From positions 124,001 through 188,000 of the IMG/VR virus record IMGVR_UViG_3300010885_025649: a stretch of DNA of 64,000 nt; one strand, written 5' to 3'. The notes under the pieces were generated by a model. The model searched no databases. It was given only the letters and a program-made list of their open reading frames with translations, and was not told the DNA's origin. How positions within the stretch are numbered: position 1 is the stretch's first letter; each line of letters begins with the position of its first letter. A program made the translations under genes and the position numbers. Below, in pieces: positions 899 to 33,874 of this stretch.

Positions 899-1468
899 TT
901 AACTAGGCCACACCGTACTAATAAGCTCTTCTTCACTAATAGGAAAATAATTATTAACATCTACTCCCACATTAAACATAGGAATATTCTTATAGTATTT
1001 TAATCGCCATGCACTATGCACATGTCCATGGATTAGAATATCCTCTTCTCCTCTGACGGCAGCAAAGTGAGGATACCTCATATCATCATAAGGTACATGT
1101 GTTACAAATGCTCGTTTACCATTAGCTAAAACCAAGGATTTAGACAAGGCGACTTTAGTAAAGCCAATGTCTAAATACTGTTGTACTGTAGCAGTTTTAT
1201 CCTTGAACTTAAAGGCGGGATGACAACTATCATGGTTACCCATATATAATTGTTTATTACCTTTTAGTTTGGGTAATACTGCGGCGGCATATCTAAATTG
1301 TAAGGTGAAATCCCCTACAAAATATACCGTATCATCATCACTAATTACACTGTTGTAATTAGCTATTAAACCCGTTGTCATTTCATCAACATCTCGCCAA
1401 GGTCTAGTCTCATAGGTGATGATGTTCTTGTGACCAAAATGTTGATCACTTGTAAAATAAAGTCCCAT
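899..1468 (-). CDS. calcineurin-like metallophosphoesterase
   Basis: FTSDQHFGH, VGDF, GNHD, THVP, IHGHVH, NVGVD motifs. Confidence 0.95.
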   Translation of the reverse strand: MGLYFTSDQHFGHKNIITYETRPWRDVDEMTTGLIANYNSVISDDDTVYFVGDFTLQFRYAAAVLPKLKGNKQLYMGNHDSCHPAFKFKDKTATVQQYLDIGFTKVALSKSLVLANGKRAFVTHVPYDDMRYPHFAAVRGEEDILIHGHVHSAWRLKYYKNIPMFNVGVDVNNYFPISEEELISTVWPS

Positions 1469-1632
1469 GTTAAATTCTCAAATTACTTTCAAGTAGGTTG
1501 TTACCGCGGCCGATTTATAATATACACAATTAAATATAATTACAAATCTATCTGTATATATTACGGTAATATTAAATGTCTCATCATCATTACTAGAATA
1601 AATACCGGGAGGTGGAAAGTTAAAGTATGTCA

Positions 1633-1845
1633 TTATTCCCATCCTCGTTTTACGTATAATTGTATTGCACTATTATGCAAGTAAATATATTTACCCATGT
1701 AAGTATCATACCTATCATGAGGTTTATCTTGCCGGTAATTCCCAACATAATAGTTACCTATATATAATTTAAGATTTCCTGGTGGGGAAACTAATACAAT
1801 ATCAAAATCATCAAAATATTTAGTCTCAAAGAAACAATAAGTCAT
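1633..1845 (-). CDS. MTYF-family microprotein
   Basis: MTYCFF start, coupled to neighbours. Confidence 0.7.
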   Translation of the reverse strand: MTYCFFETKYFDDFDIVLVSPPGNLKLYIGNYYVGNYRQDKPHDRYDTYMGKYIYLHNSAIQLYVKRGWE

Positions 1846-2017
1846 AACAAAAATATATGGTTGTGTAAAAAGATATGAGTAACCGAAAAGCCAACTGTAA
1901 GAAACCCATCTTTAAATACTTGTGTGCCAAAGTTCTCAAATCTAATAGTGAGTTTGTTGATGGTAGTGATATATTGAGGACTTGTGGAGGATTTGAATTT
2001 GAACACTAGAAAAACCT

Positions 2018-2203
2018 TTACGATTTCATGGGAACAACTTGAGAAATGATAACCTTATACTCTAATGGTTTACGAAAACTATCTTTGCGTATAATAAAAT
2101 AGTCCTTGTATACTATACCTGGTAACCTTGACTCGAAATTTAACCAAACAAACTTAGTAAGTTGTATTCGAGGACTATTATCCTTGCTAATAAAATAAGT
2201 CAT
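2018..2203 (-). CDS. MTYF-family microprotein
   Basis: MTYFIS...YKDYFI. Confidence 0.75.
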   Translation of the reverse strand: MTYFISKDNSPRIQLTKFVWLNFESRLPGIVYKDYFIIRKDSFRKPLEYKVIISQVVPMKS

Positions 2204-2372
2204 GATGGCCTAAACACATGTACTATTGCACAATTTTGTAATGTAACAACATCAGATAGACGTATATATCTATCCGAATAAAAACAATAAGCTATTGAAC
2301 TTCTATTAGATAAATTTACCTTAAGGAATTTACCAGGAATATGAACTACCGGTTGTCTAACAACTATATAAG

Positions 2373-2549
2373 TCATAACCGTGTAGTAATAAATATATTT
2401 GTGCCTGCATGAGCATTATTACTAGTAATAAACTTATCTTGATATAATATAACCATGTTTGTATAAGTTTCATGTAATAGATTAACTCTTAACCTTGTAC
2501 CAAGAACGATATTATATGTATCTTTTAATGCTGTTATAAAATGTGTCAT
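2373..2549 (-). CDS. MTYF-family microprotein
   Basis: MTHFIT...YQDKFI. Confidence 0.75.
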   Translation of the reverse strand: MTHFITALKDTYNIVLGTRLRVNLLHETYTNMVILYQDKFITSNNAHAGTNIFITTRL

Positions 2550-2698
2550 TTTGTACCTGCATGACAAGATCGGCCTACAAGAAACTCATCTAAATATAAA
2601 TTAGTGTAAGGAATACCTTGCCAGTAATCCGCCGCCTCTAAAACATAACTAGAACATTCTGTAAGTTTCATTGAATACTTAATAATAAAATACGTCAT
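2546..2698 (-). CDS. MTYF-family microprotein
   Basis: MTYFII...YLDEFL. Confidence 0.7.
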   Translation of the reverse strand: MTYFIIKYSMKLTECSSYVLEAADYWQGIPYTNLYLDEFLVGRSCHAGTK

Positions 2699-2859
2699 AT
2701 AAACTTCCAAACTACATGACATCCATAGATACATCCAAAACATATAAACTTATCTAAATAATAATAAGTCTCTGGTATTCCCGGAGTATATATAAAGTAA
2801 ACAATACCAATCTTAATAGTATTACTATAAGAAGTTACCGCATAAGTCATAGACAGCCT

Positions 2860-3297
2860 TTAAATCCTGTAGGTTGTGATTGTTGGCTTCGGCTTAGAGT
2901 TATAATCCTTTACAGAACGGAGGATGTGCAAATACTCCGATATTTGCTTAGAAGTTTTAGCTTTAGCCTCAGCTTCAGTTATTCCCACAATTTGTTCAGA
3001 AGAATAATGAAATGTTGACACCCTTTTAGGATTAATCGGAAGAGTTATAGCTTTACGCATACCCCAATTAGGAGCAAGCATAAATCCTCCAACGTATCTA
3101 GAATGTGAACATTCATACCCTTCTGGTATACACAATAAAGGGTGTAACTTCTGACCAGAAATAGCAGGAAGAATAACAATTAATTGCACAGAGTAATTAG
3201 CCCACTGCGGAAAGATCTCAGCGGCTTTAGTTGCAGGCGGAATCAACTCAGCAGCGTGTTCAACAAACTCAATAGAAAGCTCTTCAACAGGGTTCAT
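2860..3297 (-). CDS. hypothetical protein
   Basis: 145-aa ORF with AGGAG RBS. Confidence 0.75.
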   Translation of the reverse strand: MNPVEELSIEFVEHAAELIPPATKAAEIFPQWANYSVQLIVILPAISGQKLHPLLCIPEGYECSHSRYVGGFMLAPNWGMRKAITLPINPKRVSTFHYSSEQIVGITEAEAKAKTSKQISEYLHILRSVKDYNSKPKPTITTYRI

Positions 3298-3309
3298 CTT
3301 GGATCTCCT

Positions 3310-3816
3310 TTAAGAAGTAAATCTCACACCGTAAATCATAGCTACCCGATGTAGCTCCTTCAGCGCAGCCTCTTTAGTACACGTATATAATACCTGCAGA
3401 TTAAATTCAGGCAGAGCCTGTTTAATAATCAAACAAGCCATATTATGATTACAGTTATTAAAAGCAAGACTAACTGCCCCACCCAAACAATGTGAAGGCC
3501 CAAACCAACAACACTGATTATACCTACCAGAATTAGTATGATTAATTAATAACTGAATTAATTCTTTAGGATCAATCTGAGGAAGACCTGTAATGTTATC
3601 TAACTTAGCACTAGCAATATAACCACTTTTGAGTATAACATCAGTAAAATCCGCGCCGGTAAAATCAGCACCCCTAAAAGGGAAATTAGTCAAATCTACT
3701 CCGGCTAAGATACAGTGGCTAAAGTCAGCTTTAGTGACCTTAGTACCACCGGAATTAATCCAAGCCCATTGTGCCTCACGCATCTTATCAACTTTAGCTT
3801 GTGTGATCGTTTTCAT
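3310..3816 (-). CDS. pentapeptide-repeat protein
   Basis: ADFSH/VDLTN/ADFTG/ADFTD/AKLDN repeats. Confidence 0.85.
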   Translation of the reverse strand: MKTITQAKVDKMREAQWAWINSGGTKVTKADFSHCILAGVDLTNFPFRGADFTGADFTDVILKSGYIASAKLDNITGLPQIDPKELIQLLINHTNSGRYNQCCWFGPSHCLGGAVSLAFNNCNHNMACLIIKQALPEFNLQVLYTCTKEAALKELHRVAMIYGVRFTS

Positions 3817-4025
3817 TTCAGTTCCTTTGATTGTGGAGTTAAAGTTATATAAAAATCCTCCCCATAATCTTCTAAAACTAGCTTCTCACTTATATTTAAA
3901 AACACATCTATATATATAGGGTTGATTCTAAGTATTGTATGATTATTAGGATGTTTGCTCAAGATATAAAAATAATAGAAACCCTGATCTAGAAACCAAG
4001 TCTTATTAAAGTCAAGATAAGTCAT
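3813..4025 (-). CDS. MTYF-family microprotein
   Basis: MTYLDF...YIDVFL. Confidence 0.75.
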   Translation of the reverse strand: MTYLDFNKTWFLDQGFYYFYILSKHPNNHTILRINPIYIDVFLNISEKLVLEDYGEDFYITLTPQSKELK

Positions 4026-4204
4026 ACTTTATTCCTACACACACTTAGATTCTCTATAACCCTAGCTTTAGGCTCTGTATGCGTCCAATAACTTAAATAC
4101 ATAAAACCATCTGAGAATATTACGGGGTTATGTATGTATTTGTCTAAGTAGAAATCATATAATTGTAAGCCGGGAGTACATCTACCCAGATTAAAGTGAG
4201 TCAT
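4022..4204 (-). CDS. MTYF-family microprotein
   Basis: MTHFNL...FSDGFM. Confidence 0.75.
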   Translation of the reverse strand: MTHFNLGRCTPGLQLYDFYLDKYIHNPVIFSDGFMYLSYWTHTEPKARVIENLSVCRNKV

Positions 4205-4742
4205 GTTACTTTGATTACTCGTATATACCAATTACTATGAATCCAAGAACCTATATTAACAAAGTTATCTTTAAGTGAATAATTAATTGTTATATGTATA
4301 TTAGGTGGAAGCTCAAAACCTAACCGATAGTCACACAAAAAAACTCGCTGGCCAATCCTAAAAATAGTCATAGTAATACCACATCTACATTGTTACTATT
4401 CTTCGTAACTAACCCCTTACTCTCAATAAAGTTATCTTTATACATTACTTTACCCAGTATTATCTTAGGATGTAAATAAAGGTAAAAGTTGGGAATACGT
4501 AATGTGGCATAGTTATTTCGCTTCTTGATTCTAACGAAATGTGTCATGTTAATTCTTTAAGTTAAAGTAAGTCAATGTAAATACCATGAGTAGTATAGTC
4601 TGGATCTAATGGCCGCTCAAACATAACAAAGTTATCTTCATAATTACCACGCGGGCCGCTATTTCTATTATTCAAGAGTATATAAAAAGGACCTGCAGCA
4701 ATATACCGGTTAAATCCAAGATGAGTAACAAAGTGTGTCATG

Positions 4743-4937
4743 TTAATTACTTAATCTAATAGTTATATCAGGAATATTATGCGAATAAGTATCTAAACCA
4801 ATCGTAATAAAACTGTCTGTAAAAATAACACCTATTGTCCAATTGGGATTTAATATCACGTCAGTATAAGAATTAAAACGTATATACTGAAATCGAGCCT
4901 TTAGTGGTTTATTCTTAATATAAACTGTATAAGTCAT
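4743..4937 (-). CDS. MTYF-family microprotein
   Basis: MTYTVY...FTDSFI...ITIRL. Confidence 0.75.
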   Translation of the reverse strand: MTYTVYIKNKPLKARFQYIRFNSYTDVILNPNWTIGVIFTDSFITIGLDTYSHNIPDITIRLSN

Positions 4938-5442
4938 GTCATCCCTATAAATATACTGATATCGCCATCTTCATAACTTTTTGTGGTGATATACATAAAA
5001 GGATCTTCATACTCATTCTTTACCCCAACTGTGGAAAACATATGCGCGGCTATACCTTCACTAAGTTTTATTTCTCTAATCAAATCTTTAGGTTTAAAGT
5101 AAGTCATGTTAATCCATTAACTTAATATCTACTTGCTGCCTTGATTTAGCTCCAACACTAATAAAGTTATCTTCAAAGATATTACGCCGCCATGAAACAC
5201 AATTTAAATAAATATATTGGTGTTTATGTAACTGTACAAATCTACTTTGGTAATGTTCTAGAATAAAATGTGTCATGGTAATCTTCCTACAAATACTGTA
5301 GTAAGTCGCCTAAACGTTGTCGCAAGTAACTTATCTTTATAAAATACTATAATAGCTGATGGATAAATTTGTTTAGTTCGCCTATAGAAATACATGTTGT
5401 TTATTATTCTCGCATCAGAATTATTAAGCGGGAAAATGTATG

Positions 5443-5619
5443 TCATATTGTAGCTATCTCTAAAATCTTATTACCATGTACTCTAATAAACCTATCTAAA
5501 TACAATTGCTTAAATCCTATAATTACACCCCCTACATGACAAGTCATACCATATAGCTTCTGTCCGCATTTTAGATGCGTGGAATAACTAGGATGATTAT
5601 TAAGAAGAAAGTGTGTCAT
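5443..5619 (-). CDS. MTYF-family microprotein
   Basis: MTHFLL...YLDRFI. Confidence 0.75.
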   Translation of the reverse strand: MTHFLLNNHPSYSTHLKCGQKLYGMTCHVGGVIIGFKQLYLDRFIRVHGNKILEIATI

Positions 5620-5779
5620 TTTAAACACCGCGGTTTCCGCCCAATAAATAATAAACCATTAATAGTTACTTTAAGTAAACTATCTTCATAGGTTATAGGG
5701 TAATCACTCTTATTAATTCGATGGAAGAACTTTACATTGTTTATTACTTGTGTCTGAAGCCTAAGAATGAAGTATGTCA

Positions 5780-5971
5780 TTAATCAAAACCCTGTTTAGA
5801 TACTATAGATAATCTTCCTTCTGATTTATACGTGTATAACTCCAATCTAACTAAGTCATCTTGATAATAGAGTAAGTCTAATTGAGGAGTCCTATCTACA
5901 TACAACCTGATAGCTATTCTTGGTATGTTAATTAAGGCTATCCAATTGTTTTCATCCATGAAATGTGTCAT
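5780..5971 (-). CDS. MTYF-family microprotein
   Basis: MTHFMD...YQDDLV. Confidence 0.75.
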   Translation of the reverse strand: MTHFMDENNWIALINIPRIAIRLYVDRTPQLDLLYYQDDLVRLELYTYKSEGRLSIVSKQGFD

Positions 5972-6171
5972 AACGGCTTATTATTATTTAAGACTTCAAC
6001 AACCTGATGGCTATTTACGTAAATAAAGTTATCCGAATAGTCAATACAAGTATTATCTAAAGCGCGAGAACCACCAAAATAAAGTTTGCGATTCACCCGT
6101 TGTATGTAGAAAGGTAATTTTAAATAAGATGGATGCCCCGAAGTAAAATTACAAAAAAAGAGATATGTCAC
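5968..6171 (-). CDS. MTYF-family microprotein
   Basis: GTG start; TYLFF...YSDNFI. Confidence 0.75.
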   Translation of the reverse strand: MTYLFFCNFTSGHPSYLKLPFYIQRVNRKLYFGGSRALDNTCIDYSDNFIYVNSHQVVEVLNNNKPL

Positions 6172-6309
6172 GATAGCTTTCCTATAAATACCGCACGATG
6201 TGACCTAATAGTTACTCTAAGTAAAAGATCTCTATAAGCTGTTGGAGTATTTGACTCTCCATTTCTACAAGCGCCATCATATTTTATTTTTATCAGAGAG
6301 ATGGGTCAA

Positions 6310-6341
6310 AAACCCCATCCTTTAGGGCGGGGGAGTGTCAA
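6310..6341 (+). mobile_element. IS200/IS605-type terminal hairpin remnant
   Basis: AAACCCCATCCTTTAGGGCGGGGGAGTGTCAA. Confidence 0.7.
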
Positions 6342-7061
6342 TCTCTCTTATGTCTATAGCAACCTTATTCCATTCAGTCACTGTTATAAAGTTATCCTCA
6401 AGAAGCGGGTAAATCTTAATCCAAGTAGGACTATTAAAATGCACCGTTATTAACTTACATGAGCATAAAAAGAAATTAAAATATGTCACTTTTTAATCTC
6501 TCTTATGTCTATACAAATTTCATTCCAATAAGTTACCTTTACAAAGTTATCTTGGAAAAATGTATTATGCCTCCATCTTGAATTATTAAAGTATATTGTT
6601 ACTAAGTTAAATGCCTTGTTAAACGAATTGAAATGTGTCATATAGTTACAATATCCAAAGTCAAAGTATGAGGATCATATTGAGTTGTTCTAATATAACT
6701 ATCCTCAAATAATACTAAATCTGAGTTGGCATTTACACTATTTAAATATAAATAGTGCTGCAACTTTATTCCATGTCTATCATTTATACCAACAATGAAA
6801 TGTGTCATGATCTTGCACGTAGTTGAAGCCAGTTATTATTATACAAACGGGGATTTACCCAAACAGTAAACTCAATAAACCTATCCTCATATCCTAAATA
6901 TTCACCAGGATCCCAAGGTATCGAGGTAAATTTGTATGGGAAGCCTAAATAACTATTTGCAAGGTATGTCATTCTCTTGTTACCCTGAAGTCTAAAACAT
7001 AGTTATGCTTAACACAATCAAATTCAGTAGCCCTCAAATAATAATCCGGTATAAAAATATG

Positions 7062-7259
7062 TCATGATGCTACCAATCTTATATCAATAGCATACTTTGC
7101 TATCACACCTACATTATAATCATGTACTTTAATAAAAGAATCTTTATAAAGTAAAACATCCTTTTTATTTCGGAAACCATTCTGAAAGTAAATAGATCCT
7201 TTAGAAAAAGATATATAGTATTCATTGTAATTTAAACTTAAACCAAGAAAGTACGTCAT
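7062..7259 (-). CDS. MTYF-family microprotein
   Basis: MTYFLG...YKDSFI...IDIRL. Confidence 0.8.
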   Translation of the reverse strand: MTYFLGLSLNYNEYYISFSKGSIYFQNGFRNKKDVLLYKDSFIKVHDYNVGVIAKYAIDIRLVAS

Positions 7260-7483
7260 GCTACTAATTTAAAATCTAATATATCATTACGCCAACCTAA
7301 TTCAGGATTAGAATCTTCTACCGTTATAAAAGCATCAGCATATACTAAACGGTATTTACCATCAGCTTCTCCACTGGCTATATCCTCATCTTCAAACTGA
7401 AAATATACTACACATTTACCTAAATCACACCAATGCATATCAGAAATATTAAATGTACGAATTGAAGGGTAAAAGTTTGTCAT
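7256..7483 (-). CDS. MTYF-family microprotein
   Basis: MTNFY...YADAFI...LDFKL. Confidence 0.8.
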   Translation of the reverse strand: MTNFYPSIRTFNISDMHWCDLGKCVVYFQFEDEDIASGEADGKYRLVYADAFITVEDSNPELGWRNDILDFKLVA

Positions 7484-7686
7484 GACTGCAACCTAATATC
7501 AAGTGTTCGACTTCCCCCCCAACTATTTATACAATTTAGATGATTAAAAATATCAAGCCTCAGACAAGCATCTATATACACTGCAACATCACCAGAAGAT
7601 CGCTGCGGACTTTGGAAATATACCAGAAGCGGTCCCAAAATACATGCACTGTCATATTTTAATTTAGAACCATAGAAATGCGTCAT
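7480..7686 (-). CDS. MTYF-family microprotein
   Basis: MTHFYG...YIDACL...LDIRL. Confidence 0.8.
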   Translation of the reverse strand: MTHFYGSKLKYDSACILGPLLVYFQSPQRSSGDVAVYIDACLRLDIFNHLNCINSWGGSRTLDIRLQS

Positions 7687-7852
7687 GATAAAACCCTTAA
7701 ATCCATAGACCAATAATCTCCGGTAAGATCAAAGTAAGTAAGCTTAATAAATCTATCTTGGAAAGATACCTTATCTTCATACTCAATACCAGGATTGTGG
7801 AAGAATATAGCACCTATAGGCAAATTCACATAAAAGTCAGCGCCGCAATATG

Positions 7853-8044
7853 TCATCGGTTTGCTCGAATATCTATAATATCAGTAAACCTAATCACTCT
7901 TGGATCATATTCCTTAGTAGTTATATAAATATCCTCATACATTAAAGTATCCCGAGGGGTAGCGGCCGCACTATCAAAGCATACTCCGAGGAAATTAAAA
8001 CTAATATCAAAAACAGGAGTGGTAATAGTAATAAAGTAGGTCAT
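7853..8044 (-). CDS. MTYF-family microprotein
   Basis: MTYFIT...YEDIYI...IDIR. Confidence 0.8.
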   Translation of the reverse strand: MTYFITITTPVFDISFNFLGVCFDSAAATPRDTLMYEDIYITTKEYDPRVIRFTDIIDIRANR

Positions 8045-8244
8045 TCGACTAACCTGATGTCCAGATAATAGGGTGCATGAGTATGAGAATAACTAGTAAC
8101 TTCTAAATAGTTATCTAACTGTATTAATAAATCCTGTTCTGATCTACCTAAACATTGCAAGAATATAAGAATGTCAGAACTCAAATCGGGATCACCCCTA
8201 TCTACATCAGACTTATCATCACCAATATTAAAGAAATATGTCAT
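8041..8244 (-). CDS. MTYF-family microprotein
   Basis: MTYFFN...LDNYL...LDIRL. Confidence 0.8.
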   Translation of the reverse strand: MTYFFNIGDDKSDVDRGDPDLSSDILIFLQCLGRSEQDLLIQLDNYLEVTSYSHTHAPYYLDIRLVE

Positions 8245-8444
8245 CTCGTAAACCTTATGTCTAGCACAGTAGGATTTGATAGATCAAAGTCATCTAGATA
8301 TTCTATGCAAGTAATAAAGTTATCTTGATGACGTAACTGATCCTGATTACCTCTCTGTGAGTCCTGAAAACAATAAGTCTTACATCGACTAATGTCGATT
8401 TCTATATAAAAAGTAGGGGTAACTGTGTTAATAAAATAAGTCAC
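8241..8444 (-). CDS. MTYF-family microprotein
   Basis: GTG start; TYFIN...HQDNFI...LDIRF. Confidence 0.8.
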   Translation of the reverse strand: MTYFINTVTPTFYIEIDISRCKTYCFQDSQRGNQDQLRHQDNFITCIEYLDDFDLSNPTVLDIRFTR

Positions 8445-8747
8445 TTTTAAATATCCGTACTTCAGAGAGCCAAGCCGAGTCAACACAACAATAAGTCATT
8501 CTCTTGTCCGTAAAATATTTATTGTACCAAAACAAATAGCATTATGCCTTTTGAGCGTGTAGAAAAATATGTCATGTGCTTATATAAATAGTGACTTGGG
8601 AATAATCCTCTAATGCCCGAATAGTTACTAACAAATCGTGATATCTTGGGGTAATATATGGATTTCCTGTAGTAGATGTAAATAAACATATTCTAAAATC
8701 ACTACCCAACTTCCATTGAGTTACACCTATTCTATTAATAAAATATG

Positions 8748-8930
8748 TCACAGTATCCTTAAAATAATAGAATTACTAACGCTATCATAACGATAACTAA
8801 TTAGTAGCGCATCCCTAAATAGTTTTTCGTGTTCACCTTCAAGCCAAATTCTGGATAAATGAATATCCAAATTCCAACTATATACAGGTAAAGTATATCC
8901 CCAACGATTCTTACCTACAAAATATGTCAT
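8748..8930 (-). CDS. MTYF-family microprotein
   Basis: MTYFVG...FRDALL. Confidence 0.75.
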   Translation of the reverse strand: MTYFVGKNRWGYTLPVYSWNLDIHLSRIWLEGEHEKLFRDALLISYRYDSVSNSIILRIL

Positions 8931-9112
8931 GGTAAATACACATAAATACGATATTCAGCAACTATTAAGGTTTTAATGCACATAAAACTGTCTATATAAC
9001 CACAATCATCAAGTGTTCCAGCACGCAAATCTATAAGACAAATTACGTGGCGCGGCAGTGTAATATCCTCTTCGAATTTCTTGCTGTAAAACTTCTTAAG
9101 TAAATAAGTCAT
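8927..9112 (-). CDS. MTYF-family microprotein
   Basis: MTYLLK...YIDSFM. Confidence 0.75.
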   Translation of the reverse strand: MTYLLKKFYSKKFEEDITLPRHVICLIDLRAGTLDDCGYIDSFMCIKTLIVAEYRIYVYLP

Positions 9113-9134
9113 TCACCTTTACCAGATCGAGCGT

Positions 9135-9168
9135 AAAGCCCATGCCTTCAGGCATGGGGAGTTGTCAA
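9135..9168 (+). mobile_element. IS200/IS605-type terminal hairpin remnant
   Basis: AAAGCCCATGCCTTCAGGCATGGGGAGTTGTCAA. Confidence 0.75.
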
Positions 9169-9888
9169 GATCTAATGAACTACAAGGTGTGAATATAGAA
9201 CCTTTAAATATAATCATATCAATGTTGCGGAAATATGTCATTCCTTTTTAAACCAAGAGTAATTTAAATGGCCGTCAAACATAATCTCAAATTTTATATA
9301 ATAATCTATATAGAATACTTTGGGAGAACACCATGATATTTTATATATTAAATACCGCTTATAGAAATGTGTCATGTTTACTTTATTCTAATGCAAACTT
9401 TATATTATATGCGGATTAAATATTCTAACGGTGTAAGCTAATGTAATCTTCAAGAGTTTATCTTGGTAAATTATGTCGCGGCGATGCAAAATTGGATGCG
9501 CGCTTAGTAAATAATGGATTAAACTATATCGTCATATGTCATCCTAGCCTCTGAATTTGTGCATAAAAAGGGCCTATTTTCGTGCAGAAAAAAGCCACCT
9601 GCATTTGCAAGTCGCTGGATGTAAATTATTAATTGCAGGGTTTTTATGCAAAAGGTTTATGTACCTATTTTTGAGGCCTATTTTTCACTTGCCTAAATTT
9701 GCCCTGTTATATCCCTTTGTGATTGCCAAATGTTATGTTACCTGCTGTCTTTGTATGTAATCATTATAACGTTTAACAGGATGCGTAATCTGGTGTTATA
9801 ATTTATCGATTCTTAGATTAATGTGTATAGCATAATAAGCGCCAAAAGGCATTACAGATATCTCATCATACACGTTTATCAAACAAAT

Positions 9889-10185
9889 GTGCCAGTGTCG
9901 CAGTTGTGGTAATCTAATTAAATAAATAATTAAATGAATTAATTCTGTAAAATGCTCTGGGAGCGGATTATAAAAATCATTATTAATTCAATTTAATTAA
10001 TTAATTAAATTGGAGTTGAATAAATAGTATAAGCTTGGGCAAAAGCGTGAGGACCAATGCGTGCGAGACCGTTCTAGATAGTAATCCCTGGAAGTGCTAG
10101 TCATATGGTAACCCTATGTGAAATGTGCGCTAGTGTTTCAGTTGTGGTAATGGAAAAGTAACGCTAGTGTTATAAATGTGGTAAT
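9889..10185. repeat. three ~25-bp direct repeats GCYAGTGT-N5-6-TGTGGTAAT in an AT-rich intergenic region
   Basis: Copies at 9889-9913, 10127-10151 and 10161-10185. Confidence 0.7.
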
Positions 10186-10239
10186 GAATAAGAAACCGGC
10201 CTTTAAAATATACCATCTTGCGGTAGTATATCCGGGATC

Positions 10240-27356: not shown

Positions 27357-30164
27357 TTAGTCAATGCCTAGGTCAACCACACGGTTATATTCTGCTACAA
27401 CTTGTTTCTCCACCCCAAGGGTCAGAGCCACAAAGTAGAAGAAGCCTAGGTGTTTGATGCTACCTTCTCCTTGTTTAACCTTATCTGCTGTAAGAGCAGT
27501 AAAGTACAGGAGTTGGTCCTCAGAGAAGCCAAGAGTGTAAGCTTGAAGCTTATGCTCAATAGCAACCATGAGCGCACCATAGTTAGCCCCTTGAGACACT
27601 TGATCAAGGAGGATACGGTAGTCCACCTCAATAGCCTTATAGGCAACCCGAACATCTTCATACTCATCAGTGGGCAGAGCTTGACCCATGATCTCCCAGC
27701 GAGAGAGGTTAGAGGTCAAGGTATCCACATCAAGTACAGGATGCTCAGTCAAGTTGGTGAGGGTTGACCACACGTAGTCTGCTACGTGACCATAGCCTAG
27801 AGAACGAATCTCCGCCAAGTGGGGAGACAATTTCTCATAGGTGGTAGCTTCTGCCACAGCCAAAGCCCGTGCTTTGGTAGCAGTAAAGCCTTGATCACGC
27901 AGCTCATTAACCCGATCTACCAGCCCATGATCTTTCCACACTTCCTTAAGGTGGGAAATAGCACTAAGGATTGGGCTGATATCTTTGTAGGGCATTTCAC
28001 CCACGCCACCCAAAGCTTTCCACAACTTAGTAGCTTCAAGACGAAAGGCATGTAAGCTCAAAGAGCTATCAACCGTCTTCTTCATGCTGTTGAGGACCGC
28101 TTGGATGTAACGAGCGAACTTGAACCTGATAGATGGCACCGCGCCTTCAGCACCGCTATCATCACCTTTGGTAAAGGCGGCAATCAGACCTGCACTATGG
28201 TACAGGAACATCAAGGCCTTACCGAGGTTAACAGCGACGCCCACTTTAGCATCCCCTTCTTTGACCACCATAGCCATGACGTTCTTCCACGTAGAGTCTC
28301 CACTATTGGAGTGCTCAGTCTTCGTGGTAAGCGAACCATGGTTGCTGATGCGGGTATCATTTAGGGTAAGGAACTCAGGTAAGATCCCCCCTTCACAATC
28401 CCCGTCAAAGTCACCTTGAATTTGCCCTTGAGTATAGGGAGTCATCAAGAACGCTGTTTGCTCGCCATGATCAATGACCTTTAAGGCCACCCAGCTAAAG
28501 TCAAACAACGCGGGTGCGCGATGGAAGATCATCACAGAACCCAGGGGGTATTTCCCTTTCAGTTCTGCTGGAACAATTACTTCATCATCTTTAATCCCGG
28601 TGTGGGGTAGGATGGGAAGATTGTATCCAGGCAAGCGATGAGTCAACATACGCTTCTTGAAGGCGTTAGTGAACTCGCTTGTGACATCTTCAAGGATGGA
28701 CTTGGCCAGCGGAAGACCAGCAGCTTGCATACGTAAGGCTAAACCTTGCGTACCAAACTGAGAACCGGCCTCATGCTCTTTGGCCAACGTGAGGAACTTG
28801 CCCTCATCCCAGAGCTTAGCCATCGCTTGCACCTCTGCAAGAGAGGATACATGGTAGGCAGCTTTTAACTCAGGGTGGGCAAGAGTATCCATGAAGCGCA
28901 GATCTACCCCAAAGTTCAGAAGAGTCTGACGGGGATTAATCCACACGTTCATGATCAACAGTTCCTCAGGTTTGAGGGTGAGCTGATCCCCGTGCTTGGG
29001 CAAAGCGGCACCTTTTGCGCATTGGGTGAAAGCCTCCACAATAAAGCACAAAGAAGCCTCAGGATTGATCTCACGCGCCGCTGCTACCAAGCGTTTCTGC
29101 TTGTGATCAGTAGGCTTATTGATCATACCTTTGGCATTCAACATGCCGTGGTTAAGGAGAGCCGTACCTTGAGCAGGCGTGCAGGTATGCCCCACAGCCT
29201 CAAAGATTTGCTCATCATCAACCACTAACGCAAAGGGGCCATCCATGCTGACCTTGTATTTAATGCCAAGCTCTTTCGCGCTGACAAATACAATGTTAGC
29301 CAGGGAATGAAACAGGGGCGCACCAGGACGAAGGAGCGTTCTAGCCAGTTTATTAGCTAGGGCTGCATCCTCAGTCTGCTGAGGTTTATCTGTCCACACA
29401 TAGGTCCCAGATGCACCTTTAACCCCTAACAGGTATGGGTGATTAGGGAACGCTGCATGAGCATGCTCAGCAACAGGAGCCATGAAATGCTCTTTGCCTA
29501 CATAGGCTTGAGTCAGTTCCGCGCTTTCGATCTGGTACGTTGAAATAGGCTTGTTGGCCCGCACCGCTTCTGCCTCAGCCTTCTTAACGGCCTCATGATC
29601 TTTGAGGACACTAGCTTTATAATCAAACATGTCAGCGCCCGTAGGACGACCAACTTGTTGAGTAATCAAGCCATTCTCAAACACCATAGGTTTGTACCAT
29701 CCGGCCGCAAATGGGTCAGAGGTTTTAACCTTAGGCAACGGTTTCTGTGGCTGATTGAACGCACCCTTGGTAAAGCTGATGCTATCTTTCCGCGTTACTT
29801 CAGAAGCATGTGCTTCTTTTTCACACGGGAATTTCACATCAGCATAAGCCCGAGGGAAGGGGCGCTCTTGCTGAGTCCATGCGCGCACTACGCCGTTGTG
29901 GAGCTTCTTAACGCTAACAATCTTATCCAGATTACCATCAGCTTCGATCTTATACAAGATCTTAGCGACAGAGCTGAATGCAGACTGCGGCATTTTGAAG
30001 CCGTCAATAAAGAGGATAGGGTTACCCCGATCATCCCGGACGATTTCCACAAGGTGCGACGAGATAGCCTTCTTGTAGAAGAAGTCAATCACGTAGCTGC
30101 GTACAATCTCATCGGTCTCGGAGACCAATTGAATGCGCGCTTTGACGTTCATGGTTTTAGCCAT
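27357..30164 (-). CDS. single-subunit two-barrel RNA polymerase-like protein (RNAP-B, YonO-like)
   Basis: FHRAPALF followed about 33 aa later by IQGDFDGDC (28398-28412); upstream NAKGM and CAKG lysine motifs. Confidence 0.85.
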   Translation of the reverse strand: MAKTMNVKARIQLVSETDEIVRSYVIDFFYKKAISSHLVEIVRDDRGNPILFIDGFKMPQSAFSSVAKILYKIEADGNLDKIVSVKKLHNGVVRAWTQQERPFPRAYADVKFPCEKEAHASEVTRKDSISFTKGAFNQPQKPLPKVKTSDPFAAGWYKPMVFENGLITQQVGRPTGADMFDYKASVLKDHEAVKKAEAEAVRANKPISTYQIESAELTQAYVGKEHFMAPVAEHAHAAFPNHPYLLGVKGASGTYVWTDKPQQTEDAALANKLARTLLRPGAPLFHSLANIVFVSAKELGIKYKVSMDGPFALVVDDEQIFEAVGHTCTPAQGTALLNHGMLNAKGMINKPTDHKQKRLVAAAREINPEASLCFIVEAFTQCAKGAALPKHGDQLTLKPEELLIMNVWINPRQTLLNFGVDLRFMDTLAHPELKAAYHVSSLAEVQAMAKLWDEGKFLTLAKEHEAGSQFGTQGLALRMQAAGLPLAKSILEDVTSEFTNAFKKRMLTHRLPGYNLPILPHTGIKDDEVIVPAELKGKYPLGSVMIFHRAPALFDFSWVALKVIDHGEQTAFLMTPYTQGQIQGDFDGDCEGGILPEFLTLNDTRISNHGSLTTKTEHSNSGDSTWKNVMAMVVKEGDAKVGVAVNLGKALMFLYHSAGLIAAFTKGDDSGAEGAVPSIRFKFARYIQAVLNSMKKTVDSSLSLHAFRLEATKLWKALGGVGEMPYKDISPILSAISHLKEVWKDHGLVDRVNELRDQGFTATKARALAVAEATTYEKLSPHLAEIRSLGYGHVADYVWSTLTNLTEHPVLDVDTLTSNLSRWEIMGQALPTDEYEDVRVAYKAIEVDYRILLDQVSQGANYGALMVAIEHKLQAYTLGFSEDQLLYFTALTADKVKQGEGSIKHLGFFYFVALTLGVEKQVVAEYNRVVDLGID

Positions 30165-30778: not shown

Positions 30779-31044
30779 GGTTTATTCGCTCCTTTAAAGT
30801 AACGGGTTACCACAACCCACACGCCCAGAAGGAGGGGTGCAAATAAAAAGTCGGTAACCAAAAGGAGCAACCACATACACAATAACTATTGAAGCTTATA
30901 CTTGGGTCGTTCTAAGGGGCCGACCAAACCTCCACGGTCAACAGCAATCACCAAACCGAGCTCAACACTGCTAACAACAGTCATGTCTAATCCTCCTTCA
31001 AGAATAGGCAGAGAGAAGGCTCCCTGCCTACAAGTTAAAGGAGT

Positions 31045-31341
31045 TTATTTGGCAACAAATTCCCTGCAACCTCTATCTACACTGTGCGGATTAACCGCAC
31101 ACGACAACGCGGAGCTAAAGCTGTAATACTTACAGCCATAACAAGGCCTTAAAGCCTTTACAATCTCCCAGTCTTCCTCCGAACAGTAGCCTGAGGCTAG
31201 AAAGAAACTAACCTCCTGCTCCGCATACTCAGCTTGACGCTCTTCCTCTTGAGCACAGAGAAGGGCAAGGGCATCAGCCATAATCTCCCCTTGAGATTGA
31301 TCTTTGATTCCCTGTGCTTCAGCGTGTGTGTAGTAACCCAT
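31045..31341 (-). CDS. early protein with C-terminal CxxC..CAVNP..C module
   Basis: PCYGCKYY...SCAVNP...GCREF. Confidence 0.8.
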   Translation of the reverse strand: MGYYTHAEAQGIKDQSQGEIMADALALLCAQEEERQAEYAEQEVSFFLASGYCSEEDWEIVKALRPCYGCKYYSFSSALSCAVNPHSVDRGCREFVAK

Positions 31342-31452
31342 GGTGCATCTCCATTACGCCACAAATCGAGGTGGCTAAATAAAGAGTCGGTATATACAGA
31401 AAGAAAGTCGTTAACTCCTAGGGAAACTAGGATAAGTTAACGACTAGATTAA

Positions 31453-31758
31453 TTAAGCGGTGTAATAGTCAACTACAACCAAATTGCCTTTCAAGAAGGC
31501 AACAAGATCATAGTACTCGCCTTTATTAACATAAATCAAAACCTTCTTAGCCCCAAGAGCCAAGAAAGCTTGAAGCATTTCGCATGCGGTTGCATGTGAG
31601 AGGTTTTTGAACTTGGTGCGATTAGCACCAGTGTTGTAATCTTGCTTAGCCGCACGGAAGCGATTATGCTTGAGGACTAGCACTTGGCGATCCTCCACCT
31701 CTGAAAACGAGATGCAAAAGGTCAACGCTGGGGTGATAACATTATGTTCTTGTAACAT
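31453..31758 (-). CDS. hypothetical early protein
   Basis: Start MLQEH after the conserved leader and GGAG. Confidence 0.75.
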   Translation of the reverse strand: MLQEHNVITPALTFCISFSEVEDRQVLVLKHNRFRAAKQDYNTGANRTKFKNLSHATACEMLQAFLALGAKKVLIYVNKGEYYDLVAFLKGNLVVVDYYTA

Positions 31759-31833
31759 GTGTCTCTCCAATAAGCCGCCTTTAAAAGAGGGCGAACTCAA
31801 ATAAAGAGTCGGGGTTTCCCCCGACTTGTTTAT

Positions 31834-32001
31834 TTAGATCTTACCATTCTTAAGAATGGCCTCCTCCCATTCTTGCATAGCCATCCCGAAGACGATCTCC
31901 TGATCATCTTCAGGCGCAGCAGCGGCTGCTGCATATGCTTTGCACACTAGCATAAATAACAACCACTGCTGAGCAGTGGGAGTTACACAATAAACTCTCA
32001 T
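31834..32001 (-). CDS. 55-aa early protein (not in ORF track)
   Basis: MRVYCVTPTAQQWLLF...NGKI after the conserved leader + GGAG. Confidence 0.7.
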   Translation of the reverse strand: MRVYCVTPTAQQWLLFMLVCKAYAAAAAAPEDDQEIVFGMAMQEWEEAILKNGKI

Positions 32002-32225
32002 GTTCTCTCCAATAAGCCACCTTTAAAAGAGGGTAGCTCAAATAAAGAGTCGCGTTATCACACACAATAATTATGGAACTCTATACTTGGGTCGTTATAG
32101 GTAGGCAACAGCCACACCAACGCTAGCGTTAACCAAACTAAACATGTAACAACTAATCAAAAGCCTGCTCATGATTAACCCTCCAAAGTAAGTGGGAGGA
32201 AGGCCCCCCACTTTAGACAGGTTAA

Positions 32226-32369
32226 TTATTTCTTAGCTGCGGCAGCTTCTTCATCACGCTCATCTTGAAGCCATTGCTCCCAGTAAGCATCCATCTGGAG
32301 CTTATGAATCCACAGATTCCAAGCCAGTGTGTGGTTCACCAACTTGACAATCATCTTCACTTTAGTCAT
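32226..32369 (-). CDS. 47-aa early protein (not in ORF track)
   Basis: MTKVKMIVKL...AAAAKK after leader + GGAG. Confidence 0.65.
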   Translation of the reverse strand: MTKVKMIVKLVNHTLAWNLWIHKLQMDAYWEQWLQDERDEEAAAAKK

Positions 32370-32446
32370 GGTACTCTCCAATGACTCACCTTTAAAAGAG
32401 GGCAAGTCAAAGAAAAGGTCGGGATTTCTCCCAACCTTTTAATCAA

Positions 32447-32869
32447 TTAAACAGTGTAATCACGGCACAAAGTGCCAAACCCTAGGGGGTTTACAGTACA
32501 CGGAAGCCGCCACTCCCCGGTGGCGTATTTACACGCCTCACAGGGATTAGGTTCCTGTTCCGCACACCAACGGTTGTAAGCTTCTACCGCATCTGGCTCA
32601 AGCTGTTCATCTTGAGCAAGGTGGTAGGCCTCCCGGCGCTCTTGCTCCGTCAGCTCCCGCGGGTCTAACCATGCGTCATAAGCGGGAGAGTTCTCCCAAA
32701 GACACATAGCGATTTCTTCCCGAATCGCCCGTTGGCGATCAGTGAGCAGACGAGTTGGAACTCCGACCCAAGGATCTTGCAGCACAGACTGCTTAGCAGC
32801 CCAGCGCTCAAAATCCCAGTGGTTTTGGTTGACCAAAACGATCTTGGTAGCCTGAGTAACTTTAAACAT
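32447..32869 (-). CDS. early protein with C-terminal Cys module
   Basis: MFKVTQ start; CEACKY...PCTVNP...CRDYTV. Confidence 0.8.
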   Translation of the reverse strand: MFKVTQATKIVLVNQNHWDFERWAAKQSVLQDPWVGVPTRLLTDRQRAIREEIAMCLWENSPAYDAWLDPRELTEQERREAYHLAQDEQLEPDAVEAYNRWCAEQEPNPCEACKYATGEWRLPCTVNPLGFGTLCRDYTV

Positions 32870-32973
32870 TTGCGCTCCTTTAATAGTGGAGGACAAATAA
32901 AGAGTCGATAATACTTATCCTAGAAAAGAAGTCGGCAATCCCTAGAGAAACTAGGATAGATTGCCAACTCAAA

Positions 32974-33486: not shown

Positions 33487-33619
33487 ACGAGTTCCTCTTG
33501 TATTGTGCCAACTCTTGGACGACCACACCAAGAGTAAGAACTACTGACACAGGATTGTAGGACTCAGAAAGAAAGTCGCTAACTTCTAGGGAAACTAGAA
33601 TAGGTTAGCGACTAATTAA

Positions 33620-33874
33620 TTACGCGTAGTAACGGCAGGAGCTGCCATTAGCACGGGCGGTACGGCCCGCACGATCAAACTTGACGCGGCTTTTGCCGTC
33701 ACGGTTGTTTTTGCTACGGCTAAAGCAGGAACGGCAAGCGCTGGGATTACCCCAGAACCCGCCGTCAAACTTGGCATCGCCTGCCAAGAAGGTTCCGGAA
33801 GCAACGTAATAAAAGAAGGTGTTACCACCTTTCCCGTATACGTAGCTTTCCTCATCGTGAGTAACTTTAAACAT
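33620..33874 (-). CDS. early protein, basic Cys-containing
   Basis: MFKVTH start after AAAGGAG. Confidence 0.7.
   Translation of the reverse strand: MFKVTHDEESYVYGKGGNTFFYYVASGTFLAGDAKFDGGFWGNPSACRSCFSRSKNNRDGKSRVKFDRAGRTARANGSSCRYYA

What the first reader, a model, noticed from the sequence alone, without database searches (positions are those of the whole stretch)
1478..9542. Array of ~40 translationally coupled, hyper-diverged MT(Y/H)F microproteins
Seen: about 40 ORFs, mostly 45-75 aa, over half below the ORF-track cutoff (e.g. starts at 1633, 2376, 2850, 4371, 4547, 4741, 5107, 5276, 5446, 5780, 6489, 6641, 6808, 6972, 7856, 8751, 9375). Nearly all start ATGAC(A/T/G)(T/C)A(T/C)TT, many overlap the previous stop via ATGA, and they share a central (Y/F)xDx(F/Y)I motif and often a terminal (L/I)DIR; the rest is unalignable. 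Adjacent copies 6341-6489 and 6490-6641 share AATCTCTCTTATGTCTATA, showing tandem duplication, and some members are truncated. Inference: a birth-and-death expanded small beta-fold family, possibly a diversified anti-defence/decoy or host-binding repertoire. The conserved start motif could act as a recombination joint.
Basis: partly seen in the sequence, partly recalled or inferred. Interest (0 to 1): 0.8.

Follow-up and report, generated by a model that had tools for sequence, protein, structure and literature searches.

The report
Forty tandem microprotein genes in cyanophage
A large freshwater cyanophage carries about 40 back-to-back copies of a tiny, previously unseen gene family. The copies are real, very diverged from each other and predicted to fold into small beta-sheet proteins, but their function is unknown.

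Summary
On the minus strand of 1478-9542 lie 37 intact ORFs (40-75 aa) and at least 5 decayed copies of one family. 36 of 37 start with MT. 25 of 36 junctions are ATGA stop/start overlaps. The ORFs cover 96 % of the two blocks, against 16 % in shuffled sequence. Leave-one-out HMMs recognise most members, also without the N-terminal motif. AlphaFold2 models of two members agree on a five- to six-strand all-beta fold (pLDDT 84 and 79).

No relative was found outside this phage. I searched 1.84 billion protein cluster representatives, a 5.8-billion-protein index, Pfam, PHROGs, PDB sequences and five fold libraries. The phage is a 212-kb freshwater metagenome contig, distantly related to Microcystis phage Ma-LMM01.

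The wobble positions of the start motif vary freely, so the motif is selected as protein, not as DNA. The closest pair of copies is only 43 % identical, and two metagenome contigs carry the same array. This is therefore an old, retained repertoire, not a current amplification.

Function is inferred only. Most likely it is a polycistronic, translationally coupled set of small non-structural binding proteins for host takeover or counter-defence. No RNA, protein or population data were available.

The parts
9376..10239 (-). Intergenic region upstream of the array. It holds three copies of the 23-nt motif ATTACCACAACTGNNACACTNGC (9891-10185), a hairpin plus T-run (9597-9612), and a decayed first copy. 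The decayed copy is MTYDDIV* at 9519-9542, followed by a frame-shifted '...IYQDKLLKIT...' body down to about 9400.
9238..9375 (-). member 1, 45 aa, MTHF
9119..9241 (-). member 2, 40 aa, MTYF; lacks the central Asp and scores weakly with the HMM
8927..9112 (-). member 3, 61 aa, MTYL
8748..8930 (-). member 4, 60 aa, MTYF
8572..8751 (-). member 5, 59 aa, GTG start, (V/M)TYF
8428..8575 (-). two N-terminal stubs of decayed copies: MTYF... 18 aa at 8519-8575 and MTYC... 23 aa at 8428-8499
8241..8444 (-). member 6, 67 aa, GTG start, ends ...LDIRFTR (DIR subfamily)
8041..8244 (-). member 7, 67 aa, DIR subfamily
7853..8044 (-). member 8, 63 aa, DIR subfamily
7683..7856 (-). member 9, 57 aa, MTYC, ends ...MDLRVLS
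7480..7686 (-). member 10, 68 aa, MTHF, DIR subfamily
7256..7483 (-). member 11, 75 aa, MTNF, longest member, acidic insert
7062..7259 (-). member 12, 65 aa, closest to the family consensus; AlphaFold2 model 1 (pLDDT 83.9, six strands)
6973..7065 (-). decayed copy: MTYFYTGLLFEGY* plus an out-of-frame C-terminal remnant ...LDFRVTRE
6805..6972 (-). member 13, 55 aa, MTYL
6638..6808 (-). member 14, 56 aa, MTHF
6486..6641 (-). member 15, 51 aa; one of the youngest pair, with member 16 (43 % aa identity outside the first four residues; 81 % DNA identity over 57 nt)
6322..6489 (-). member 16, 55 aa, GTG start; partner of member 15
6168..6305 (-). 5'-truncated copy with no canonical start and no MTYF; keeps ...AYRDLLLRVTI... 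and the GTGA overlap with the next gene
   Evidence: (D9)
5968..6171 (-). member 17, 67 aa, GTG start, (V/M)TYLF
5780..5971 (-). member 18, 63 aa, MTHF; TAATG junction to the next member
5616..5780 (-). member 19, 54 aa, MTYF
5443..5619 (-). member 20, 58 aa, MTHF
5273..5446 (-). member 21, 57 aa, MTYI
5109..5276 (-). member 22, 55 aa, MTHF; AlphaFold2 model 2 (pLDDT 79.3, five strands)
4934..5107 (-). member 23, 57 aa, MTYF
4743..4937 (-). member 24, 64 aa, MTYT
4562..4741 (-). member 25, 59 aa, MTHF
4368..4547 (-). member 26, 59 aa, MTHF
4201..4371 (-). member 27, 56 aa, MTIF
4022..4204 (-). member 28, 60 aa, MTHF
3813..4025 (-). member 29, 70 aa, MTYL; last of block A; ATGA overlap with the pentapeptide-repeat gene
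3310..3816 (-). non-family gene inside the array: 168-aa pentapeptide-repeat protein (PF00805, E = 2e-8)
2860..3297 (-). non-family gene inside the array: 145-aa protein with no relative anywhere (ORFan)
2695..2850 (-). member 30, 51 aa, MTYA; first of block B
2546..2698 (-). member 31, 50 aa, MTYF; C-terminally short
2373..2549 (-). member 32, 58 aa, MTHF
2200..2376 (-). member 33, 58 aa, MTYI
2018..2203 (-). member 34, 61 aa, MTYF
1842..2006 (-). member 35, 54 aa, GTG start, atypical (V/M)FKF N-terminus but keeps the VFKDGFL core
1633..1845 (-). member 36, 70 aa, MTYC; lacks the central Asp
1478..1633 (-). member 37, 51 aa, MTYF; last copy, 9 nt upstream of the phosphoesterase gene
899..1468 (-). 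first gene downstream on the same strand: metallophosphoesterase (phrog_547, E = 2e-42). It is followed by a 71-aa ORF, an HNH endonuclease (123-614) and, beyond the window edge, PRPP-synthetase-like and NAMPT genes.

Best explanation
What is shown. This is a real, protein-coding, lineage-restricted multigene family in a roughly 212-kb freshwater cyanophage. There are 37 intact tandem paralogs and at least 5 decayed ones, each about 55-65 codons.

What is inferred about the protein. Each copy encodes a small soluble all-beta protein of five to six strands. The hydrophobic core positions are conserved, as is a Y-x-D-x-F-(I/V/L) hairpin with a near-invariant Asp. The N-terminal tetrapeptide MT(Y/H)F is near-invariant and is modelled as unstructured.

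What is inferred about origin. The family grew by serial tandem duplication long ago. The copies have since diverged to about 22 % mean identity. Nearly all have stayed open, and a few have died.

What is inferred about expression. The copies lie in one direction behind an 860-bp intergenic region, in two blocks. They are probably read from long polycistronic mRNA. Ribosomes would pass from gene to gene by termination-reinitiation at ATGA or TAATG overlaps, giving co-ordinated synthesis of the whole set.

Most likely function (inference only). A repertoire of small non-structural binding proteins made together during infection. Each would have a different surface on a common scaffold (pI 4.2-10.4, variable loops). 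Each would bind a different host protein, or variants of polymorphic host proteins, for host takeover or counter-defence. The invariant N-terminal tetrapeptide would be a shared handle for a common partner or processing step.
For: Coding:
- ORFs cover 96 % of the array, against 16 % in shuffles.
- GC falls across codon positions 1 to 3 (36.5, 31.8, 25.8 %), as in the phage's structural genes.
- 37 of about 42 units are still open in 32 % GC DNA despite about 22 % identity.

Family:
- Leave-one-out HMM median 16.8 bits. 29/37 members beat every decoy; the best decoy of any kind reached 10.3 bits. 18/37 still do so without the first four residues.
- The HMM finds only array members in the 64-kb window and its flanks.

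Fold:
- AlphaFold2 pLDDT 83.9 / pTM 0.68 and 79.3 / 0.57. Strands fall at equivalent alignment columns.
- Hydrophobic residues alternate in the strands, and gaps concentrate in the loops.

Protein-level selection on the N-terminus:
- Wobble bases of codons 2-4 vary (ACA 21, ACT 11, ACG 3, ACC 1; TAT 16, TAC 7; CAT 8, CAC 3; TTT 17, TTC 10), much as in the gene bodies.
- Five other ATGA-overlap genes of the same phage start MI, MI, MS, MN and MK, so MT is not forced by the overlap.

Coupling: 27 of 36 junctions overlap. A weak AGG/GGA signal peaks at -11, whereas other genes of the phage have clear AGGAG sites.

Old, retained repertoire:
- Best pair 43 % identical; TRF finds no tandem DNA repeat.
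- Identical array in two metagenome contigs.

Non-structural accessory context:
- A pentapeptide-repeat protein sits inside the array. Phosphoesterase, HNH, PRPP-synthetase-like, NAMPT and NT5C-like genes lie downstream on the same strand.
- Portal and capsid genes are more than 42 kb away on the other strand.

Diverse surfaces: pI ranges from 4.2 to 10.4.
Against: - No expression evidence. No RNA run was listed, and only DNA runs hold the sequence.
- No homolog, domain or significant fold match gives a functional clue.
- The fold rests on an alignment of only 36 paralogs. The five AlphaFold2 models spread from pLDDT 56 to 84, and the ESM Atlas single-sequence model is poor (pLDDT 0.39).
- The functional assignment rests on genomic neighbourhood and analogy only.
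- No related phage is available to test conservation, copy-number change or selection. With paralogs this diverged, dN/dS is saturated, so I did not attempt it.
- The promoter scan is no better than chance, so the single-operon reading is an inference from gene packing.
Confidence: 0.55

Rival explanations
1. Packaged cargo. The microproteins are loaded into the capsid and injected with the DNA. MT(Y/H)F would act as a minimal targeting tag shared by otherwise hyper-diverse proteins, in analogy to the T-even internal proteins, whose only common feature is the capsid targeting sequence.
For: - The only near-invariant segment is the N-terminal tetrapeptide. It is selected at the amino-acid level and is modelled as unstructured.
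Against: - The conserved tag is 4 residues, not about 10.
- A protease-type (L/I)xE site within residues 5-20 occurs in only 3/37 members.
- The array is more than 42 kb from the portal and capsid genes, on the other strand, among metabolic and accessory genes.
- There are no virion proteomics.
Confidence: 0.12
2. Largely functionless expansion. Unequal recombination at the microhomologous gene starts multiplied a single small gene. Most copies now drift. They stay open mainly because translation through the array is needed to express or stabilise the long mRNA that also carries the downstream genes.
For: - Extreme divergence (about 22 % identity) and at least 5 dead copies.
- No homolog outside this phage.
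- In-register microhomology of 6-15 nt at the starts, similar to that used for T4 amplifications (PMC9391042).
Against: - 37 of about 42 units remain open in AT-rich DNA, where random ORFs of this length are rare.
- Core hydrophobic positions, the Asp and the N-terminal motif are kept in nearly all copies while synonymous sites are free.
- This pattern is not expected from drift or from selection for 'any translation'.
- The array is 8 kb, 3.7 % of a packaged genome, which is costly if useless.
Confidence: 0.15
3. Immunity-type or nuclease-inhibitor array. Each copy neutralises a different variant of a polymorphic host or competitor toxin or nuclease, as tandem immunity-gene arrays do in polymorphic toxin systems. 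This is a special case of the main explanation.
For: - Tandem arrays of diverged small immunity genes are a known arrangement (PMC3482391 and PMC3113570, listed).
- The top structural neighbour of both models is ComJ, an inhibitor of the NucA nuclease (4mqd_A, Z 4.2 and 3.5).
Against: - Those Z-scores are below the tool's stated noise level (a typical best chance Z is 7-8). The two models are not independent.
- No toxin gene or known immunity family is present in the array or among the neighbours that were scanned.
Confidence: 0.1
4. Not protein-coding. The units would be a DNA- or RNA-level repeat (binding sites, promoters, structured RNA), and the ORFs would be incidental.
For: The DNA motif ATGACNYAYTT recurs at roughly 170-200-nt spacing.
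Against: - ORF coverage of 96 % against 16 % in shuffles.
- Conservation follows codons and amino-acid classes, with free wobble positions.
- No DNA tandem repeat by TRF.
- No Rfam family or tRNA.
- Spacing varies from 129 to 228 nt.
Confidence: 0.02

Closest known systems
Internal proteins of T-even phages (IPI, IPII, IPIII and the polymorphic IP loci) with their capsid targeting sequence
   Same: Small, very diverse phage proteins whose only shared feature is a short N-terminal sequence. At least IPI* is an anti-restriction protein (PMC3012670).
   Different: - No sequence or fold relation.
- The T4 tag is about 10 residues and is cleaved by the prohead protease (my own knowledge). Here 4 residues are conserved and there is no cleavage-type motif (3/37).
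- T-even phages carry a few such genes, not about 40 paralogs.
- The location is among accessory genes, far from the head genes.
Segmental amplification or 'genomic accordion' of anti-host genes (T4 dmd-tifA; poxvirus K3L)
   Same: Tandem multiplication of a small anti-host gene by recombination at 6-10-bp microhomologies (PMC9391042; review PMC13359090). The starts here share 6-15 nt in register.
   Different: Accordions are recent, near-identical, unstable copies that raise dosage. Here the closest pair is 43 % identical, there is no DNA-level tandem repeat, and copy number is the same in two samples. At most this is the old, diversified end-state of such a process.
Lineage-specific multigene families of giant viruses (Nucleocytoviricota) and large phages
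   Same: Large viral genomes that grew partly by duplication into lineage-specific paralog families (PMC13359090).
   Different: Those families mostly use recognisable domains such as ankyrin, BTB or MORN repeats (my own knowledge). This one is a 55-65-aa protein with no homolog and no fold match, packed as overlapping genes in one operon-like run.
Host-takeover clusters of small early genes (Bacillus phage SPO1 gp37-60; T4 and T5 early small ORFs) - from my own knowledge, not tested here
   Same: Dense one-directional clusters of small ORFan genes next to nucleotide-metabolism and accessory genes. Their products bind host proteins.
   Different: Genes in those clusters are unrelated to each other. 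Here all are paralogs of one family. The timing of expression is unknown.
Tandem immunity-gene arrays of polymorphic toxin systems
   Same: Runs of diverged small paralogs thought to neutralise variant toxins (PMC3482391 and PMC3113570, listed).
   Different: No toxin gene nearby and no match to known immunity families. The array is phage-borne.
ComJ (Nin), inhibitor of the NucA nuclease of Bacillus subtilis (PDB 4mqd)
   Same: Best structural neighbour of both predicted models (Z 4.2 and 3.5).
   Different: The Z-scores are well below the level the tool regards as meaningful. ComJ has 133 residues and the alignment is scattered over the whole chain. There is no sequence similarity.

Membership tests
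Translationally coupled operon (termination-reinitiation) | Stop codon of the upstream gene overlaps or abuts the start codon of the next gene (ATGA, TAATG) | tested here: met
   25 ATGA and 2 TAATG overlaps, plus 2 one-nt gaps, among 36 junctions
Translationally coupled operon (termination-reinitiation) | Translation of the downstream gene depends on translation of the upstream gene | not testable with these tools
   Needs reporter fusions or ribosome profiling. No RNA run was listed.
T-even internal proteins with capsid targeting sequence | Conserved N-terminal tag of about 10 residues ending in a prohead-protease site (L/I)xE | tested here: not met
   Only 4 residues are conserved. [LI]xE within residues 5-20 occurs in 3/37 members.
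T-even internal proteins with capsid targeting sequence | Protein present inside the virion | not testable with these tools
   No isolate and no proteomics
Genomic accordion / segmental amplification | Near-identical tandem copies at the DNA level | tested here: not met
   Best pair is 43 % identical at the protein level, with 81 % DNA identity over only 57 nt. TRF finds no array.
Genomic accordion / segmental amplification | Copy number varies within or between populations | tested here: not met
   Two IMG/VR contigs from different samples are collinear with 0 differences in the array. Contigs from two further runs match exactly. Only two samples, so this is a weak test.
RiPP precursor families (e.g. 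prochlorosin-type) | Long conserved leader (Nif11/NHLP type), double-Gly cleavage site, Cys/Ser/Thr-rich variable core, modifying enzyme nearby | tested here: not met
   No Pfam leader family. Only 4 N-terminal residues are conserved. GG or GA occurs in 5/37 members. Cys is 1.8 %. The conserved part is a folded beta core. No modifying enzyme among the neighbours scanned.
Polymorphic-toxin immunity arrays | Adjacent toxin gene or toxin cassettes; membership in a known immunity superfamily | tested here: not met
   No toxin or immunity domain in the array or in the neighbours scanned
Any described protein family or fold | Significant sequence or structure match | tested here: not met
   Sequence:
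- Pfam and PHROGs: no family hit by more than one member.
- PDB sequences: best E = 0.43.
- 1.84 billion cluster representatives: only the array's own members, plus three repetitive long proteins at E about 1e-4.

Structure:
- Foldseek against PDB, AFDB clusters and BFVD: E of 0.7 or worse.
- VIA-align: best Z 4.2.
- ESM Atlas: nothing above the chance level.

The most novel reading that the evidence does not exclude
The array is a phage-encoded library of one minimal beta scaffold, diversified into about 40 different binding surfaces and made together from one coupled mRNA. It would be a hard-wired binder repertoire that neutralises many polymorphic host defence or physiology proteins at once. 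The invariant N-terminal MT(Y/H)F would be a new kind of shared tag for loading, modification or docking. This would be a new protein fold family and a counter-defence strategy not described for phages.
Probability: 0.2. Interest if true: 0.85.

Novelty: new variant of a known kind. Interest (0 to 1): 0.6.

Why it matters
Tandem gene-family expansion is a known route by which large viruses adapt. In phages, however, it has mostly been seen as short-lived amplification of identical copies. Here about 40 anciently diverged, still-open copies of one microprotein take up 8 kb (3.7 %) of a phage genome. That implies long-term selection for diversity on a tiny scaffold.

The family has no relative among billions of proteins and no recognisable fold, so it is a clean target for structure and function work. 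If the copies bind different host factors, the array would offer a ready set of natural inhibitors of cyanobacterial proteins. It would also show how phages store breadth of counter-defence. The case further shows how many real genes lie below common ORF-length cut-offs.

Tried and rejected
1. Homolog searches with the family profile found only the array itself. I used the 5.8-billion-protein word index and an exhaustive HMM search of 1.84 billion representatives. Three long repetitive proteins at E about 1e-4 were judged chance.

2. The search for related loci with the alignment failed because no stretch is conserved enough. With the flanking phosphoesterase, the membrane protein, the 145-aa ORFan and the capsid protein it returned only the same phage in two samples, or unrelated phages with no family HMM hit.

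3. Degenerate DNA patterns of two or three spaced start motifs gave nothing useful.
   - IMG/VR gave 15 foreign loci, all short-period DNA repeats.
Together they gave 159 fetched loci with 0 HMM hits.

4. tblastn of one member against 50,697 phage records gave nothing below E = 3. Six-frame HMM scans of all of Microcoleus phage My-WqHQDG and of the first 50 kb of Ma-LMM01 gave no hit.

5. Sequencing runs: only two freshwater DNA runs hold the sequence, and both are identical to it. No RNA run was listed. There was therefore no expression and no population variation to use.

6. I tested whether the C-terminal DIR motif is really a Shine-Dalgarno site for the next gene. AGG-type triplets do peak at -11. 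But Arg codon choice in the last 7 codons is not clearly different from elsewhere (AGG 7/23 against 18/87). Left unsupported.

7. The sigma-70 promoter scan was no better than shuffles.

8. Literature searches found no described array of this kind.

9. dN/dS among paralogs was not attempted because synonymous sites are saturated at this divergence.

Full report
**Setting.** The window is part of a phage genome.
- It encodes a Mu-type portal (51914-53416) and an E-type major capsid protein (58517-59674), among other phage genes.
- The DNA is from IMG/VR contig 3300010885_025649 (212,497 bp). A near-identical 155,514-bp contig comes from a second sample.
- Public runs that hold the sequence are freshwater metagenomes.
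- Megablast against 50,697 phage records finds nothing.
- By protein, the capsid and portal are 26-28 % identical to Microcystis phages Ma-LMM01 and MaMV-DC and to Microcoleus phage My-WqHQDG.
- This is therefore a distant, unclassified relative of that group of freshwater cyanophages. The host is not known.

- All features are on the minus strand.
- The start motif ATGACN[TC]A[TC] occurs 34 times in 1478-9542. It occurs once more on that strand and once on the plus strand in the rest of the 64 kb.
- Reading from each motif gives 37 ORFs of 40-75 aa.
- They tile 95.6 % of the two blocks. Markov shuffles give a mean of 15.8 % (max 29 %).
- 25 of 36 junctions are ATGA overlaps and two are TAATG. 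Each gene therefore sits one frame back from the previous one.
- GC falls across codon positions 1 to 3 as in the phage's structural genes.
- Five further units are decayed. They comprise three N-terminal stubs, one frame-shifted copy and one 5'-truncated copy that still carries the core motif and the GTGA junction. Together that makes about 42 units.
- The 19-mer shared by the two adjacent copies is real. It lies in a 57-nt stretch of 81 % identity.
- One correction: the terminal DIR motif is found in only 7 members (10 with a looser pattern). Nine of those ten lie within the run of 11 consecutive members 8444-6322; the tenth is the member at 5276.

**One family, one fold.**
- Mean pairwise identity outside the first four residues is 22 %. 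The best pair is 43 % identical.
- Leave-one-out HMMs score held-out members at a median of 16.8 bits. 29/37 beat every decoy. The best decoy of any kind was a reversed sequence at 10.3 bits, and the best decoy ORF reached 5.3 bits.
- When the first four residues are removed from both model and target, 18/37 still beat every decoy.
- Conservation sits at alternating hydrophobic positions, in a Y-x-D-x-F-(I/V/L) stretch whose Asp is present in 35/37 members, and in the N-terminal tetrapeptide. Gaps cluster between these elements.
- AlphaFold2 with the paralog alignment gives pLDDT 83.9 / pTM 0.68 for the member at 7062-7259 (six strands). It gives 79.3 / 0.57 for the member at 5109-5276 (five strands).
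- The strands fall on the same alignment columns.
- The prediction depends on the paralog alignment. The ESM Atlas single-sequence model is poor.

**No relative anywhere.**
- The profile finds only the array's own members in a 5.8-billion-protein index and in an exhaustive scan of 1.84 billion cluster representatives.
- Pfam, PHROGs and PDB sequences give nothing consistent.
- Foldseek against PDB, AlphaFold DB clusters and BFVD gives E of 0.7 or worse.
- VIA-align gives a best Z of 4.2 and 3.5, both to the nuclease inhibitor ComJ. That is below the tool's stated noise level.
- The Atlas searches are at chance level.
- Pattern scans of viral, metagenome and genome collections returned only short-period DNA repeats.
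- Six-frame HMM scans of all of My-WqHQDG and of the first 50 kb of Ma-LMM01 are empty.
- Within the window and its flanks, the HMM hits only the array.

**What the start motif is.**
- Codons 2-4 keep their amino acids while their third positions vary: ACA 21, ACT 11, ACG 3, ACC 1; TAT 16, TAC 7; CAT 8, CAC 3; TTT 17, TTC 10. This is about as free as in the gene bodies.
- Five other ATGA-overlap genes of the phage begin MI, MI, MS, MN and MK, so the overlap does not force Thr.
- The motif is therefore selected as protein.
- What remains at DNA level is an exact in-register match with a median of 6 nt, 8 nt or more in 22 % of pairs, and a maximum of 15 nt.
- That is in the range of the 6-10-bp microhomologies at which T4 makes segmental amplifications (PMC9391042).
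- The motif could thus help unequal exchange, but this is a by-product. No recombinant was observed.

**History.**
- Neighbours are slightly more similar than random pairs (p = 0.019), and the DIR subfamily sits almost entirely in one contiguous block. Both fit local tandem duplication.
- There is no near-identical pair and no TRF array. There is no difference between the two contigs within the array, while 12 differences lie in the surrounding roughly 41 kb.
- The array is an old, retained set, not a running accordion.
- Keeping 37 of about 42 copies open in 32 % GC DNA argues for selection on each copy.

**Context and likely working.**
- The array follows an 860-bp AT-rich intergenic region. 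That region has a hairpin plus T-run and three copies of a 23-nt motif found nowhere else in the window.
- The array is split by a pentapeptide-repeat protein and a 145-aa ORFan.
- It runs straight into a phosphoesterase and an HNH endonuclease. Beyond the window come PRPP-synthetase-like, NAMPT and NT5C-like genes on the same strand.
- The structural genes are more than 42 kb away on the other strand.
- Members range from pI 4.2 to 10.4. This argues against one common nucleic-acid-like or nucleic-acid-binding role.
- My best reading is a co-expressed, translationally coupled repertoire of small non-structural binding proteins acting on host factors, with a shared N-terminal handle.
- The coding, family, fold and history statements rest on the tests above. 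The function is inference by context and analogy.
- Rivals are packaged cargo with a minimal targeting tag, a mostly drifting expansion, and an immunity or nuclease-inhibitor array. A non-coding repeat is disfavoured by the coding evidence.

**Comparison and verdict.**
- The closest analogies are the T-even internal proteins, which are diverse proteins sharing only an N-terminal tag (PMC3012670). Others are phage and poxvirus gene amplification (PMC9391042; PMC13359090) and multigene families of giant viruses.
- The array fails the tested defining features of each: tag length and cleavage site, near-identity of copies, and known domains.
- It is a new protein family in an unusual, extreme arrangement of a known evolutionary kind.
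- Interest is moderate to high. The main limits are the lack of expression data and of related genomes.

Noticed in passing
window 12000-40400: The GC content jumps to 45-50 % here, against 31-38 % in the rest of the window. Both metagenome contigs are collinear across the 12-kb boundary, so it is not an obvious assembly chimera. The region holds about 35 minus-strand ORFs with no Pfam or PHROGs match.
   Followed up: partly
window 27357-30164 (-): This 935-aa ORF contains ...IQGDFDGDCEGG..., the DFDGD metal-binding signature of two-barrel RNA polymerases. The only sequence support is a weak hit of residues 522-602 to the largest subunit of plant RNA polymerase V (E = 0.039). There is no match in phage records. 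It is a candidate, highly diverged phage RNA polymerase.
   Followed up: partly
window 30840-40378 (-): The 18-nt motif TTAYCGACTNTTTATTTG occurs 10 times, all on the minus strand and upstream of genes in the GC-rich region, against 0.4 expected. Three of the downstream genes also share the ribosome-binding site and an MFKV start. It looks like a phage-specific promoter class. It is absent from the microprotein array.
   Followed up: partly
window 9891-10185 (-): Three copies of the 23-nt motif ATTACCACAACTGNNACACTNGC lie only in the intergenic region upstream of the array, against 0.01 expected. This may be the control region of the array.
   Followed up: no
window 31045-31341, 32447-32896, 35099-35566 (-): Three otherwise different proteins share a Cys-rich C-terminal module of about 33 aa (C..C.YATGE..LPC.VNPL.FG..CRDYTV). 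Two of them are 70 % identical over that stretch.
   Followed up: no
window 41329-50895 (-): A 3188-aa ORF with no Pfam or PHROGs match lies next to the portal region. Microcoleus phage My-WqHQDG also has a giant ORF of more than 7.8 kb just before its portal and capsid genes.
   Followed up: no
window 40435-41304 (+): A phage-encoded PAS-domain protein (PF13426, E = 6e-22).
   Followed up: no
L001 11712-14032 (+), 17041-17568 (+), 18812-20074 (-); this lies beyond the left edge of the window: Downstream of the array on the same strand lie a PRPP-synthetase-like gene, a nicotinamide phosphoribosyltransferase (NAMPT) gene and an NT5C-like nucleotidase gene. An IS605 OrfB/TnpB-type gene is on the other strand. 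Together these suggest an NAD and nucleotide salvage set.
   Followed up: no
window 3310-3816 (-) and 2860-3297 (-): A pentapeptide-repeat protein and a 145-aa protein with no relative in 5.8 billion sequences sit inside the array and split it into blocks of 29 and 8 intact members.
   Followed up: partly
L089 600-1626 (-), contig Ga0208916_10000010: An unrelated metagenome contig has a 171-bp-period repeat. Each unit carries ATGACNYAYTT followed by a stop after four codons (MTYF* or MTHF*). There is no family HMM hit, so I took it as coincidence.
   Followed up: no
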